Assembly: GCF_963853765.1 (NCBI RefSeq)
Contig: NC_088855.1
Coordinates: 22,072,001 to 22,136,000 of the forward strand
DNA length: 64,000 nt
DNA from: Magallana gigas
Lineage: Eukaryota
Direction: 5' to 3'
The notes beneath the pieces are model-generated. The model was not told the DNA's origin. It saw only the letters and a program-made list of their open reading frames with translations, and did no database searches. The position numbers and the translations under genes are program-made. Below are positions 858-49,870 of the stretch, piece after piece; the stretch's first letter is position 1, and every line of letters begins with the position of its first letter.

Positions 858-1091
858 CATTACACATGGCAGGATCTCCACTCCATGAACCATTACTTAG
901 ACAGGTGCGGGTCAAATCGCCCCCAGAATGATTGAAACCCGGAACACAGGAGTAGATAGCCTCACTACCAGTGTAGTAGGTTTGTTGAGTTCCGGTTCCG
1001 TTGGTGGAGAAAGGTTCACTTACATTGGAGCGTGGTTGGTGAACAACAGTTCCAACATTGTCAGGTAAAGTCAATGCTGGACAGGTAATCA
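858..1091 (-). CDS. Gene B exon 12: duplicate long-loop sushi/CCP (S9 type)
   Basis: 234 nt, phase 1-1; 20 nt differences from 4387-4620 (about 91% identical), with homologous flanking intron. Confidence 0.9.
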
Positions 1092-47200: not shown

Positions 47201-49870
47201 TTACCAATGAAATGTAGCTCCTTAAAGCCGCTTGGTCCGCTTTTTTGCCAAAACATTTCTGAAATCTATCTCATTTCCTTTATTTATAGCGAATGTCAAA
47301 TTAAAGTTGTAAGACAATCATACTCGTCTTGACTTCGGAGTTGACTCATAATAAGGAGCAAATTACCTAATACAATGCCCTTTGAAAATTTGATTTGTAA
47401 TCAAATTTTGTATATTTTATTTTCCCTTTAAGATATGGCTTAACTGTTGAAGAACTAACTGCAATGCCTATTACTATACATAATTATAATAAGTAAAACA
47501 ATCGTTTAAAGGCATACATAAAAACTGATTTAAAATCGAACCAAGATCGTTATATTAGCTTACAGACAGAGTAATGCTATTCTTCGTGCATTTGAGATAA
47601 TCATGAATGTCTTGTATTTTCTATCTAAATATGAGTAATACGATTACAAATAAAAAAAATGTTCATATTCTCCTTGATATATGAGCAAATCTATGTAGTG
47701 ATATAATTGGTATAGACAGAAGGATAATTATATCAACTCTACCCACATTGTCCTTGGTCTGCCCTCCTTAAATCTGAATATTTATATCCCATTAATAAAT
47801 TTGTGCTTAAACTAATATGGCCGAAGTTTCCCCAGACAATATCAAAAGTATTGATTGACATGTGATATTAAACATATTGATGTCCCCTATTTTGATTGCA
47901 CAATTTAAATCATCATTTTACATCATCCGGAATATAATTCGTCTTTACAAGGACATATCGTAAGCGATAGTCTCATGGAACTTTTATTCATTTAATTCGA
48001 AAGATGTTCGATACTGAATTTTGATAATGATCAAGTGGGCCTCTGGCACCCGAGATGAAGTACATGTAAATCTAGAAGGTCTTTGCTGAGATAAAACCTC
48101 AACTCTGTGAAGGTATAATATTTCAAAAATAAACATTGAGAAAAAACTTTGAAAGCGTTTTAGTATTTTATTTCACTGTTATAATTGTTTCTTCATATTA
48201 ATATGTACTTAGTCTTTTTTTTTTAGATTTTTGAAGTAGTAATTTACACGCTGAAAACGTTTGATCCGCATATAGGTACAGTATGCTTTGCAAGACTTTT
48301 ATTTTAGTAAATTAAATATAAATGGTGTTCTGTAGCAAGCTGGCTACGAAATCGAAGTATACAAAGAAAGAAAAGAAAGTATAAAAAGGAAGTAAAGTTT
48401 TGATAAGACTTCATTTTTTTAAAGGAATAGATTTACTGAAATGTATTTCTTAAAAATCCCAATGCAGAGCATTTTTCCACAAGGAGATCAATAAAGCCTA
48501 AAAATGACTATGACCGTCAAGTTCTCTTAAAGCATTGTTCGTGATCAGTCACACGATGTTACTTTTTTTAAACACAGCAGTAGTTTCCCTGACAATAATT
48601 AGAAAACGTAAATCGGCAAAAGAATCGAAGTAATGAATATTTAAAATATTTTGCAAACTATTCTAACAACGTTCTTGTCTTTTCTCCCATAAAACAAAGC
48701 GTATTTGTGTTGGTTTTATTTTTGTTTTAAATAACAAGTCAGTCACAGCATATTAGAGGCATGTTAACAAGTTAACCTAGTTGCTTTAAACAGAGCTGTG
48801 ACGTACGCCTGTGGTCTGTCTATTTCGTTATCGACCATTTAGCCTGACGTGGCTCATTGAAAGGTTTCGCTTTTGAAAACAGCGCATATTTTTGCTTGAG
48901 AACAATGTCATTTTTAACTTGTACTTTGATGCAAAAGGTAGATAGGTACATCAGACCAAAACTCTACGATCTTGTTGAAATGGCTCTCATATGCAAAGAA
49001 AAGTTGTACCTATTAGCAAAGACTAAATCTTGTTCGGTTTCATTGCACATTATGATTTTAAATATTACAATGTCCTCCGGGTATAACGAGCTCGGATATT
49101 ACGAGGCACTGCTTACAACGAGATGATTGTGTGGTCCCAAATTATCTCTTAATTATTTCCTTTTTTATAAAATCCGGATACAACGAGATCGTTTATAACA
49201 GGACCTCTTATATTACGAGGTGACAATTTGTGCCCGTTAATGATGCGGTATCAGAAAGCATAATTTCAATATCAAACCTGCAAGAAAGTTTAGCATATTA
49301 AAATTCAAGCAAAGGGTCAATAGTCCGCTAAAACTTTTTAAGATTTCTGAGTCCAAATGTAGGGGCCTATACGCTTTATGTTTGAATTTATATATATCAT
49401 GTGTCCGTACAGAAAAGATTTTCTTAAACAATACCATGTATATTGTACAAAAGTTTATCTTGATAAGAATAAATTATATCGTAGATTTATATTTTATTAA
49501 CTGTTAACTATTTACTTACTGTAATTAGCCTTTGAGCTATACCTAAAGATTACTCATATAAGGGTTTTTTTATGTCGTAGGTACCTTATGGTTTTTGTTT
49601 AATTTCTGAGAGCAACTGAAATATTGGAACTGATAGCTAAATAATAAATTCAAATATCTCTTTTGCATTCTAGTCGCATGTTCGAGATCATCAAAAATAT
49701 TTTCGCTTTACCAGAAAAATAATCTTTTTCAACTATTATATTAAAAAAGTATTCATTCCCTACGGTTAAAGATTACCCGATACTTTCATCATTTTACAAC
49801 CAGAGCACATGCACTTACCAAACTGTATGAAAATCCACATGAATACACATTTGAATCGCACGTTTGGCAT
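25890..49870 (-). CDS. Gene A (complete, 19 coding exons, about 1229 aa): type I membrane protein with signal peptide, 3x unassigned beta-rich repeat, 11 sushi/CCP modules, coiled-coil, TM and short tail
   Basis: Hand-built join, complement of 49819-49870, 46000-46350, 40861-41040, 40204-40335, 39137-39229, 38590-38822, 37434-37701, 36147-36326, 33128-33304, 32668-32844, 31965-32153, 30900-31076, 30191-30367, 29817-30011, 29450-29626, 28360-28587, 27189-27389, 26493-26669, 25890-26215. All introns are GT-AG, phases are compatible, and the total is 3690 nt, open from ATG to TAA. Confidence 0.85.
26493..26669 (-). CDS. Gene A exon 18: sushi/CCP S11
   Basis: 177 nt, phase 1-1; EIYCPDLETPPNS...FVCNKGYQQTNGSLQQKCLATGKWSGIELVCK. 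Absent from the ORF track. Confidence 0.92.
27189..27389 (-). CDS. Gene A exon 17: sushi/CCP S10
   Basis: 201 nt, phase 1-1; EIFCPPL...FSCKPGFRLNDSSSLLCQIDGTWNGTLPNCS. Absent from the ORF track. Confidence 0.92.
28360..28587 (-). CDS. Gene A exon 16: sushi/CCP S9 with a long inserted loop
   Basis: 228 nt, phase 1-1; DITCLALPFPDNG-(insert)-GTQASYACNPGF...DLTRTCLNNGTWDGNSVTCD. Confidence 0.92.
29450..29626 (-). CDS. Gene A exon 15: sushi/CCP S8
   Basis: 177 nt, phase 1-1; EILCPNVTDPGNG...YSCNTDFEVTSGNLSRVCTLNGTWSGGPPICS. Absent from the ORF track. Confidence 0.92.
29817..30011 (-). CDS. Gene A exon 14: sushi/CCP S7
   Basis: 195 nt, phase 1-1; EIFCTDIQTFENG...FSCDAGFRLSLDLNITCLVTGSWSEAPPVCS. 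Confidence 0.92.
30191..30367 (-). CDS. Gene A exon 13: sushi/CCP S6
   Basis: 177 nt, phase 1-1; EIFCPGLYHPLNG...YSCDTGFNHTGGDLTRTCQLNGTWSGEPAICS. Absent from the ORF track. Confidence 0.92.
30900..31076 (-). CDS. Gene A exon 12: sushi/CCP S5
   Basis: 177 nt, phase 1-1; EIFCPPVNASANSEMVISNHSVNSTLTYSCIDGFEHTFGNLHRTCLLDGTWSGDPPNCS. Absent from the ORF track. Confidence 0.9.
31965..32153 (-). CDS. Gene A exon 11: sushi/CCP S4
   Basis: 189 nt, phase 1-1; EIFCPW...FACQPGFSLSSYETITCLITGDWSADSPVCN. Confidence 0.92.
32668..32844 (-). CDS. Gene A exon 10: sushi/CCP S3
   Basis: 177 nt, phase 1-1; EIRCPSLLDPING...FSCNPGF...RTCAPNGSWTGTSAECS. Confidence 0.92.
33128..33304 (-). CDS. Gene A exon 9: sushi/CCP S2
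   Basis: 177 nt, phase 1-1; ETLCPDEIDPPNG...YACNERFNISAGNLNRTCFPNGTWSGILPTCS. Absent from the ORF track. Confidence 0.92.
33408..33535. mobile_element. Short palindromic (fold-back) element
   Basis: 38-bp arms tattatgaggtgataatttcggtcgg..ggtcaaa and tttgacc..ccgaccgaaattatcacctcataata, followed by a ttcaaagaatgatt.cttatt end also seen at about 60266. Confidence 0.7.
33610..34832. mobile_element. 1.2-kb non-autonomous TIR DNA transposon with 4-bp TSD
   Basis: TIR agcacgtgtgt ... acacacgtgct, subterminal aacgcacttt repeats at both ends, ttgt duplicated on both sides; no transposase ORF. Confidence 0.8.
35168..35748. mobile_element. 581-bp element with a 143-bp near-perfect palindrome (copy 1)
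   Basis: Perfect 58-bp arms at 35178-35235 and 35263-35320; the whole block is repeated at 54188-54768. Confidence 0.8.
36147..36326 (-). CDS. Gene A exon 8: atypical sushi/CCP module S1 (5 Cys)
   Basis: 180 nt, phase 1-1; SCNTT...NGYL...PCE...VCNFGY...RC...W...PQC. Confidence 0.85.
37434..37701 (-). CDS. Gene A exon 7: head repeat 3
   Basis: 268 nt, phase 0-1; ISPLNGPNHGFQFYGAGSVVTSGDYNPD..SRYSGLIFGYNQYGVFVW...PWGGG; same length as 11264-11531. Confidence 0.9.
38093..38450. mobile_element. Fold-back MITE-like element
   Basis: About 36-bp inverted arms aatattta.ttgttttatacgatataaaatggtttg and caaaccattttatatcgtataaaact.ataaatatt (38093-38220). The right boundary is approximate. Confidence 0.6.
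38590..38822 (-). CDS. Gene A exon 6: head repeat 2/3 junction
   Basis: 233 nt, phase 1-0; PITSAADGWG...VRVLAWTFDN...CRWTWN...PRMIFP...LVLVT; donor gttagg. Confidence 0.85.
39137..39229 (-). CDS. Gene A exon 5: head repeat 2 with CxxC
   Basis: 93 nt, phase 1-1; GMPACLRCGSDAGGLAFAYNTTHVRVWVK; homologous to 12512-12604. Confidence 0.88.
40204..40335 (-). CDS. Gene A exon 4: head repeat 2
   Basis: 132 nt, phase 1-1; TYLEIPFTNMTSAPDMVVVQAKP...GLVSEGN; homologous to 12714-12839. Confidence 0.88.
40861..41040 (-). CDS. Gene A exon 3: end of head repeat 1 and start of repeat 2
   Basis: 180 nt, phase 1-1; GTVDRWYHPLSN...DAFVRVKMWRRNDMPPDFDSGFQY; homologous to 13217-13381. Absent from the ORF track. 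Confidence 0.88.
42765..43223 (+). mobile_element. HINE/pearl(CvA)-like element
   Basis: GTCC tetranucleotide repeats near the 5' end, 3' palindrome gagatggtcaccatctc and ctagtt terminus. Confidence 0.75.
43510..43890. mobile_element. Degenerate MITE
   Basis: Imperfect terminal IR cacctgtaaggtgaga / tctcatctgtcaagtg; a related terminus tctcacctgtcaggtgag lies at about 36957-36975. Confidence 0.5.
44777..45434. mobile_element. HINE/Helentron-like family 2 (copy 2)
   Basis: Subterminal IR gggagttgatttt / aaaatcaactccc, 3' hairpin agtact-tc-agtact, internal palindromic core at about 45040-45155. Confidence 0.75.
46000..46350 (-). CDS. Gene A exon 2: head repeat 1 (most of it)
   Basis: 351 nt, cag acceptor and gtaagt donor; encodes ...PVKVIVEVKV...FGSSPRDDDATEKYGGVIYFYNASGV...; 86% aa identity to 16627-16977. 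Confidence 0.9.
49819..49870 (-). CDS. Gene A exon 1 (coding part): signal peptide MPNVRFKCVFMWIFIQF
   Basis: aaaaaATGCC start context, 52 nt then G|gtaagt donor, acceptor cctgcag at 49918. Same length, phase and start context as gene B exon 1. Splices in frame to GFGYG-TTVYEP. Confidence 0.75.

What the first reader, a model, noticed from the sequence alone, without database searches (positions are those of the whole stretch)
858..49870. Tandem pair of uncharacterised modular surface receptors: unknown triple-repeat head on a variable-length CCP stalk with a coiled-coil/TM anchor
Seen: two paralogs share signal peptide, three unassigned beta-rich repeats and CCP modules; gene A also shows the coiled-coil, TM and short tail. 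The stalks differ in module number and order, one CCP exon is dead, one is freshly duplicated, and one loop shows only nonsynonymous change. Known: CCP arrays act as rigid spacers that project a recognition head, as in selectins (lectin head) and the RCA complement regulators CR1, CR2 and CD46. Inference: this is a selectin-like layout with a novel head, a candidate expanding invertebrate recognition or adhesion receptor family. I do not recognise the full architecture as a named gene.
Basis: partly seen in the sequence, partly recalled or inferred. Interest (0 to 1): 0.8.

Follow-up and report, generated by a model that had tools for sequence, protein, structure and literature searches.

The report
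Oyster stalked receptors with unnamed head
Three neighbouring Pacific-oyster genes encode single-pass membrane proteins that hold an unnamed, three-part all-beta "head" on a stalk of up to eleven Sushi/CCP modules; databases list the genes under misleading automatic names, and the head family, which also occurs in a sponge, a sea anemone and an acorn worm, has never been described.

Summary
The window is Magallana (Crassostrea) gigas. Gene A (minus strand, 49870-25893) matches RefSeq XP_034338770.2 letter for letter in 19 coding exons. Its automatic name, "SVEP1", is wrong: Pfam finds only 10 Sushi domains. RNA contigs from three studies join head exons to CCP exons at the predicted GT..AG sites.

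Gene B (17543 to about 3.3 kb left of the window) is a paralog. A third paralog, gene C, lies further left, so the "pair" is a trio.

Relatives place the same head on CCP, cadherin, coiled-coil or collagen stalks. This fits a distal binding module. The ligand and the function are untested.

- The stalks differ in module number, not order.
- The "fresh" duplicate is a two-exon unit older than the B/C split.
- The dead exon has also lost its splice acceptor.

This is a new variant of a known receptor layout.

The parts
49819..49870 (-). Gene A coding exon 1: ATG plus the first 17 residues of the signal peptide (MPNVRFKCVFMWIFIQF), donor G|GTAAGT
   Evidence: Exact mapping of P0173. DNA read. Homologous first exons in genes B and C.
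45998..46350 (-). Gene A head exon H1: end of the signal peptide and most of repeat 1 (holds the conserved DDD...YGG motif)
   Evidence: No Pfam hit. 142 representative clusters match it. dS to B and C is only 0.2-0.3, against about 1 in other exons.
40862..41038 (-). Gene A head exon H2: end of repeat 1 and start of repeat 2
40202..40333 (-). Gene A head exon H3 (repeat 2)
39138..39227 (-). Gene A head exon H4 (repeat 2, GG.AFAYN core)
38590..38820 (-). Gene A head exon H5: end of repeat 2 and start of repeat 3
   Evidence: RNA joint 37701|38590 in three runs.
37435..37701 (-). Gene A head exon H6 (repeat 3)
   Evidence: RNA joints to H5 and to CCP1.
36148..36324 (-). Gene A CCP module 1: degenerate, five cysteines, below Pfam detection
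   Evidence: RNA joints 36326|37434 and 33304|36147.
26494..33305 (-). Gene A CCP modules 2-11, ten phase 1-1 exons: 33129-33305, 32669-32845, 31966-32154, 30901-31077, 30192-30368, 29818-30012, 29451-29627, 28361-28588, 27190-27390, 26494-26670
   Evidence: Exact mapping. Pfam Sushi x10, E 1.9e-87. Splice sites.
25893..26216 (-). Gene A anchor exon: CxCxC, heptad-rich segment, RKK...DFRPS motif, transmembrane helix, 24-residue tail, stop
   Evidence: At least 99 related exons in the same genome. The same anchor ends the orthologs and more distant head-family members.
17492..17543 (-). Gene B coding exon 1 (MPIDRLSVVSFWIFVHH, donor T|GTAAGT)
11265..16975 (-). Gene B head exons H1-H6 (about 16625-16975, 13218-13379, 12712-12843, 12513-12602, 11898-12131, 11265-11531). 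Open frames with AG/GT kept
   Evidence: 51-84% amino-acid identity to gene A's exons.
8356..9715 (-). Gene B CCP modules 1 (9539-9715) and 2 (8356-8532)
6872..7048 (-). Gene B dead CCP exon (module-5 type): acceptor CAG>CAA, Cys1>Arg, Cys2>Tyr. The frame is still open and the donor is kept
   Evidence: by comparison with the intact copies in genes A and C..
2909..4621 (-). Gene B CCP modules 9 (4388-4621) and 10 (2909-3097): first copy of the duplicated two-exon unit
859..1092 (-). Gene B CCP module 9': second copy of the unit. Its partner 10', module 11 and the anchor exon lie left of the window. The variable loop is at codons 23-38 of the open frame 847-1116

Best explanation
These are type I single-pass membrane glycoproteins of an undescribed family.

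Proposed parts, from the outside in:
- A cleavable signal peptide.
- A compact head of about 400 residues, all beta, made of three homologous beta-sandwich repeats. I propose that the repeats pack as a single-chain pseudo-trimer, and that each descends from, or converges on, a self-trimerising sandwich of the PA2794-C / phage-knob type.
- A heavily N-glycosylated stalk of phase 1-1 Sushi/CCP exons. Unequal exchange, exon death and exon skipping change its length (0 to 11 modules across orthologs and paralogs) without breaking the frame.
- A widely reused anchor cassette: CxCxC, a short heptad segment, a transmembrane helix and a short tail without a known signalling domain. It fixes the protein in the membrane and probably oligomerises it.

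Most likely role: a cell-surface recognition or adhesion receptor. The head would be the ligand-binding tip (a glycan is the best guess), the stalk would set the reach, and the anchor would provide avidity.

Shown: gene structures, transcription and splicing of head to CCP, repeat homology, confident fold, structural neighbours, family distribution, purifying selection.

Inferred: pseudo-threefold packing, ligand binding by the head, oligomerisation, any immune role.
For: - Gene model: 19 exons identical to XP_034338770.2. RNA contigs of four runs in three studies show GT..AG joints H5-H6-CCP1-CCP2.
- Domains: 10 Pfam Sushi domains, a transmembrane segment and 38 sequons.
- Repeats: homologous at hhalign probability 99.3-99.6%.
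- Fold: head model pLDDT 90, pTM 0.92. Single-repeat model pLDDT 86.
- Weak sequence echo: PF22432 (PA2794-like_C) is one of the two most recurrent weak Pfam hits among 131 repeats.
- The same head sits at the tip of other stalks: CCP, VWA, D8C and EGF, cadherin and TIG, coiled coil or collagen.
- Orthologs keep head and anchor while the stalk varies: 0, 4, 9 or 10 Sushi.
- Selection: omega is about 0.28 for head and stalk between A and B/C, at dS 0.64-1.0.
Against: - No ligand, tissue or infection-response data were obtainable.
- The best structural neighbour is known as an oligomerisation domain, not a binding domain.
- The CCP-to-anchor joint was not checked with reads. It rests on RefSeq and ortholog models.
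- The cytoplasmic tail is not conserved between A and B/C.
Confidence: 0.6

Rival explanations
1. The head is only a structural or oligomerising cap. The functional binding surface is the CCP array, which would act as a membrane-bound complement regulator in the style of CD46 or CR1, acting on oyster C3-like proteins.
For: The closest fold neighbour of the repeat is a trimerisation domain with no known ligand. CCP arrays are the binding parts of RCA proteins (established knowledge). One CCP loop shows 10 nonsynonymous and 0 synonymous codon changes.
Against: Head and anchor are the conserved core, while the stalk can shrink to 0 CCPs in a Saccostrea ortholog (P0172). The same head tops cadherin, collagen and coiled-coil stalks that contain no CCP. 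The head is under purifying selection as strong as the stalk's.
Confidence: 0.12
2. The proteins act in homophilic or heterophilic cell-cell or cell-matrix adhesion in tissue architecture (for example epithelium, mantle or larval settlement), not in non-self recognition.
For: Relatives combine the head with cadherin, VWA, EGF and D8C modules typical of adhesion and matrix proteins. There is no signalling domain in the tail. Purifying rather than strongly diversifying selection acts on the head.
Against: Tandem expansion, module turnover and a fast-changing CCP loop are more typical of environment- or pathogen-facing families. Secreted collagen- or coiled-coil-stalked relatives resemble soluble pattern-recognition proteins. 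None of this is decisive.
Confidence: 0.2
3. The loci are decaying or mis-assembled duplicates, and the long models are annotation artefacts.
For: Older annotations fuse A and B (K1QMI7, 1912 aa; C. angulata XP_052713881.1, 2184 aa). Gene B holds a dead exon, and an orphan CCP fragment lies nearby.
Against: All 19 A exons are open with canonical splice sites and match RefSeq exactly. Spliced RNA contigs were seen in three studies. Omega is about 0.28. Orthologs in four other oyster species have the same architecture.
Confidence: 0.03

Closest known systems
Selectins (CD62E/L/P)
   Same: Type I membrane protein with an N-terminal recognition head, a CCP stalk whose length varies between paralogs, one transmembrane helix and a short cytoplasmic tail.
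   Different: No C-type lectin domain and no EGF domain (Pfam). The head is a three-repeat module of about 400 residues from an unnamed family. A CxCxC/heptad cassette precedes the transmembrane helix.
C-terminal trimerisation domain of Pseudomonas aeruginosa pseudaminidase PA2794 (PDB 3h6j/2w38; Pfam PF22432 PA2794-like_C)
   Different: Sequence similarity is below any family threshold (best E 0.028, in 2 of 131 repeats). The PF22432 model finds nothing in the oyster genome. Here three copies are fused in one chain instead of three chains associating.
Engineered single-chain TNF-family and C1q-family trimers (4zch, 4dou)
SVEP1 and CSMD1/3 (the automatic RefSeq/UniProt names of this gene)
   Same: Many Sushi/CCP repeats.
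   Different: No VWA, EGF, pentraxin, HYR or CUB domain. The names reflect only CCP similarity and are misleading.
Collectins, ficolins and C1q (stalked recognition proteins)
   Same: Relatives of this family put the same head at the C-terminal end of a collagen-like or coiled-coil stalk behind a signal peptide.
   Different: The head fold and sequence family differ. The window's genes are membrane-anchored through a CCP stalk.

Membership tests
Selectin | N-terminal C-type lectin domain | tested here: not met
   Pfam scan of P0173 finds only Sushi, plus overlapping sub-threshold HRM and cEGF. Head exons have no Pfam hit at E<=1.
Selectin | EGF domain between head and CCPs | tested here: not met
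   No EGF family above cut-off. Exon H6 joins directly to CCP1 in RNA.
Selectin | CCP stalk, single transmembrane helix, short tail | tested here: met
   10 Sushi domains plus 1 degenerate module. Mean Kyte-Doolittle hydropathy over 19 residues 2.73 at 1183-1205, and a 24-residue tail.
RCA complement regulators (CD46, CR1, CR2, DAF) | Ectodomain made essentially of CCP modules only | tested here: not met
   A non-CCP head of about 420 residues precedes the CCPs.
RCA complement regulators (CD46, CR1, CR2, DAF) | Binding or cofactor activity towards C3b/C4b | not testable with these tools
   Needs a biochemical assay.
SVEP1 (automatic name) | VWA, EGF, pentraxin and HYR domains besides Sushi | tested here: not met
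   None found by Pfam in P0173.
CSMD (CUB and sushi; earlier automatic name) | Alternating CUB domains | tested here: not met
   No CUB hit.
Pfam PF22432 PA2794-like_C | Sequence score above the curated cut-off (27 bits) | tested here: not met
   Best E 0.028, in 2 of 131 repeats. The family HMM finds nothing in the own genome, and the control genomes also gave nothing, so that search is uninformative.
Pfam PF22432 PA2794-like_C | Same beta-sandwich fold over the whole domain | tested here: met
H-type lectin (PF09458; HPA, discoidin, SLL-2) | Sequence match to H_lectin, or a fold match clearly above background | tested here: not met
TNF / C1q superfamily | TNF or C1q jelly-roll sequence signature | tested here: not met
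   No Pfam C1q or TNF hit. Only weak global matches to single-chain trimers.
The unnamed three-repeat head family itself | Collinear match to the whole module of about 400 residues, with the conserved motifs (DDD...YGG in repeat 1, DGWG in repeat 2) | tested here: met
   phmmer of the head covers positions about 5-415 in more than 40 proteins. Invariant and near-invariant columns are listed.

The most novel reading that the evidence does not exclude
The head defines an unrecognised, metazoan-wide domain superfamily (sponge to hemichordate). It would have arisen when a self-trimerising beta-sandwich of the bacterial or phage receptor-binding type was triplicated into one chain. It would serve as a lectin-like recognition tip that animals mount on interchangeable stalks: CCP, cadherin, collagen or coiled coil. 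In oysters it would then be a new class of expanded pattern-recognition or adhesion receptors.
Probability: 0.3. Interest if true: 0.75.

Novelty: new variant of a known kind. Interest (0 to 1): 0.55.

Why it matters
- Bivalves rely on large, fast-evolving families of innate recognition proteins. Most attention has gone to named domains such as C1q, FREP, C-type lectin and TLR.
- Here a confidently folded module of about 400 residues has no Pfam model. It occurs in about 20-25 oyster genes, and also in a sponge, a cnidarian and a hemichordate. It always sits at the end of a stalk.
- Naming the module and finding its ligand would add a new recognition domain to the animal repertoire. It would also correct misleading "SVEP1" and "CSMD" annotations that spread through transcriptome studies.
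- If the pseudo-trimer reading holds, the head would be a natural counterpart of engineered single-chain TNF-type trimers.
- The locus is also a clean example of stalk-length evolution by symmetric-phase exon gain, loss and death.

Tried and rejected
- Pfam on head exons and on ten relatives: no family.
- NCBIfam and PHROGs on head and anchor: nothing. The Oscarella hits are collagen repeats only.
- Profile of 131 repeats against PDB sequences: 0 hits at E<=10.
- Foldseek of the whole head against PDB: no hit at E<=0.001. ESM Atlas by shape: only a mollusc fragment of the same family. Atlas by features: scores below 0.9, leads only.
- BFVD viral library with one repeat: only weak tailed-phage rows, E>=0.02.
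- PF22432 searched in the oyster genome: nothing. The controls were also silent, so this is uninformative.
- The look-up of encoding contigs for P0173: not on record.
- Word-based homolog search with the anchor region: only orthologs.
- Papers: no paper mentions the accessions of this gene or of six relatives. A general search on oyster Sushi expansions gave nothing specific.
- H-type lectin and TNF/C1q membership: considered and rejected (see the membership tests).
- Pfam on ten other open frames of the window (20.7-59.5 kb): nothing.
All whole-protein work used the database protein P0173, which a tool returned and which equals the spliced model. Genes B and C were analysed exon by exon only.
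- The N run at 55656-55783 was left untouched.

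
Full report
**Where and what**

The window is G000:C3:22072001-22136000 of a 564-Mb, 29-contig assembly. A protein cluster found through the head sits on a contig of exactly the same length (61,039,741 bases). It carries the names Magallana/Crassostrea gigas XP_034338770.2 and XP_065935020.1. 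The genome is therefore the Pacific oyster. GC content is about 31% and the genes are split into many exons.

**Gene A**

The database protein P0173 (XP_034338770.2, 1229 aa) maps to the minus strand with 100% identity in 19 coding pieces from 49870 to 25893. The parts are:
- one signal-peptide exon;
- six head exons;
- eleven CCP exons;
- one anchor exon.

All boundaries are AG/GT, and every CCP exon is phase 1-1.

Every whole-protein step used P0173, which a tool returned. Isoform X1 (P0170) maps to the same 19 pieces and is one residue longer at the exon 1/2 junction.

Pfam finds 10 Sushi domains (E 1.9e-87) and nothing else above cut-off. The first module (36148-36324) is a five-cysteine degenerate CCP that Pfam misses.

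The protein has a hydrophobic N-terminus and one strong transmembrane segment at residues 1183-1205. It has a 24-residue tail and 38 N-x-S/T sequons, 31 of them in the stalk. The automatic names (SVEP1, and earlier CSMD1/3) are not justified. There is no VWA, EGF, pentraxin, HYR or CUB domain.

**Transcription**

Fourteen listed RNA or probable-RNA runs hold 11-15% of the sampled words of 29400-39000. Exons make up about 20% of that stretch.

I laid contigs of four runs, from three studies, on 33100-39000. They show three joints:
- 37701|38590;
- 36326|37434;
- 33304|36147.

Each has CT..AC ends, which is GT..AG on the minus strand. They fall exactly at the predicted H5/H6, H6/CCP1 and CCP1/CCP2 boundaries. 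One 1632-base contig carries H6, CCP1 and CCP2 and runs on for about 1 kb beyond the laid stretch. So head and CCP exons are in one transcript.

It rests on the RefSeq model and on orthologous models in four other oyster species that end in the same anchor.

**Genes B and C**

Gene B has a homologous first exon (17492-17543) and six intact head exons. Its CCP exons are 9539-9715, 8356-8532, 6872-7048, 4388-4621, 2909-3097 and 859-1092. Two further CCP exons and its anchor exon lie left of the window, at window coordinates -690 to -3272.

A third paralog, gene C, follows further left, from exon 1 at -9608 to the anchor at -43118. Between B and C lies an orphan, partly broken copy of A-type modules 2-5.

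The stalk maps, in gene A's numbering, are:

| Gene | CCP modules |
|---|---|
| A | 1-11 |
| B | 1, 2, 5(dead), 9, 10, 9', 10', 11 |
| C | 1, 2, 5, 7, 8, 9, 10, 9', 10', 11 |

The stalks differ by loss and by a two-exon duplication. The order is conserved.

**The sub-claims**

*Dead exon.* It is confirmed and is more broken than noted. Compared with the intact copies in A and C, B's module 5 has acceptor CAG>CAA, Cys1>Arg and Cys2>Tyr. Because the exon is phase 1-1, skipping it keeps the frame.

*"Fresh" duplicate.* It is 90% identical in the exon and 79% over the duplicated 0.75-kb block. Gene C has the same [9-10][9'-10'] arrangement, and B-to-C copies are 85-90% identical over exon plus flanks. 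The duplication therefore predates the B/C split.

*The loop.* It has 10 nonsynonymous codons (11 base changes) and no synonymous change in 16 codons. The rest of the module has 5 synonymous and 4 nonsynonymous. By my arithmetic, 0.75^11 is about 0.04, so this is suggestive only. The loop of 9' also differs at six residues between B and C, while the loop of 9 is identical between them. The position is a hotspot.

**Selection and age**

- A against B or C: dS 0.64-1.0 and omega about 0.28, for head and stalk alike.
- B against C: dS about 0.12. Those omega values are inflated by intron flanks that I left in the aligned frames.
- Exon H1 has dS of only 0.2-0.3 between A and B/C, and 89% DNA identity against 74-80% elsewhere. 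This suggests gene conversion.

**The head**

Neither the six head exons nor related full-length proteins match any Pfam family. NCBIfam and PHROGs are also blank. A profile of 131 repeats finds no PDB sequence at E<=10.

An exhaustive HMMER search with exon H1 finds 142 representative clusters. In more than 40 of them the whole module of about 400 residues aligns collinearly.

The three repeats are homologous to one another: hhalign probability 99.3-99.6%, E 1e-20 to 1e-24.

With a 44-sequence alignment the head folds as one compact all-beta body, with pLDDT 90 and pTM 0.92. Foldseek finds no PDB match for the whole head, and the Atlas finds only a mollusc fragment of the same family.

PF22432 (PA2794-like_C) is one of the two most recurrent weak Pfam hits among the 131 repeats. 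It appears in two members, best E 0.028. This is a hint, not membership.

My reading is that the head is a single-chain pseudo-trimer of PA2794-C-like sandwiches.

**Family context**

Named members come from these groups:
- oysters (Crassostrea, Saccostrea);
- scallops;
- an ark clam;
- a unionid;
- a mussel;
- the sponge Oscarella;
- Nematostella;
- the hemichordate Ptychodera.

All are "uncharacterized" or carry borrowed names.

The head is combined with several kinds of partner:
- Sushi, VWA, D8C or EGF modules;
- cadherin and TIG repeats, in apparently intronless metagenomic giants;
- in another class, a signal peptide plus a coiled-coil or collagen-like stalk, with the head at the C-terminus.

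The close oyster orthologs keep head and anchor while the stalk has 0, 4, 9 or 10 Sushi domains.

The oyster genome holds 51 repeat-exon matches in about a dozen loci, mostly tandem clusters. That is roughly 20-25 genes.

A head that always sits at the free end of a spacer or an oligomerising stalk fits a binding tip. What it binds is unknown. A glycan is my best guess, from the phage-knob-like neighbours and from the conserved acidic and aromatic loops.

**The anchor**

The last exon has at least 99 relatives in the genome. One is a mucin-like gene 20 kb right of gene A. Others lie in clusters that also hold head exons. It is a reused membrane-anchor cassette with the pattern C.C..C, heptads, RKK...D.RPS and a transmembrane helix. 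It has no Pfam family. Oligomerisation through it is inference.

**Verdict**

However, the genes are already in RefSeq under wrong names, the pair is a trio, and function is untested.

The scan's own notes on this window (s1-399304, s1-399359, s1-399398) agree with what I measured. This is a new variant of a known receptor layout, built around an undescribed and widely distributed head domain.

Noticed in passing
left of the window, window coordinates -6032 to -7923 (L013): An orphan cluster of four CCP exons lies between gene B's anchor exon and gene C's first exon. It is collinear with gene A's modules 2-5 and 80-93% identical to them in protein. It is partly broken: one Cys>Tyr, and truncated frames. 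It looks like a remnant of a segmental duplication.
   Followed up: partly
window 45998-46350 vs 16625-16975 (and gene C, -10478 to -10128): Head exon H1 is far more similar between the old paralogs than any other exon: 89% DNA identity and dS 0.2-0.3, against about 1 elsewhere. This suggests gene conversion confined to this exon.
   Followed up: partly
right of the window, about +70593 to +71258 (L018): A minus-strand exon encodes a Ser/Thr-rich mucin-like stretch followed by the same anchor cassette (C.C..C, heptads, RKK..D.RPS, transmembrane helix). The cassette has at least 99 relatives in the genome and no Pfam family.
   Followed up: partly
window 33297-33887, 35070-35857, 38025-38615: Intronic stretches of gene A are covered at very high depth by many short RNA-run contigs with many variants. 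These are probably expressed interspersed repeats, not part of the gene.
   Followed up: no
window 9844-10209 and 24309-24724; also 15773-15970: Related low-complexity elements with long G/C runs appear in introns and between the genes. They translate as poly-Gly or poly-Pro. This is likely a repeat family.
   Followed up: no
window 44806-45449 vs 8-687: A repeat of about 0.65 kb, 69% identical, is shared between an intron of gene A and an intron of gene B. One segment is also present inverted (45040-45152 against 381-275).
   Followed up: no
window 55656-55783: An assembly gap or masked run of 128 N. I left it untouched.
   Followed up: no
proteins P0174 (C. angulata, 2184 aa) and P0177 (K1QMI7, 1912 aa): Public models fuse gene A and gene B into one protein and pick different CCP exons (skipping the dead exon and others). 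Annotation of this locus is unstable across assemblies. The 965-aa record P0169 lacks modules 6-9 of gene A.
   Followed up: partly
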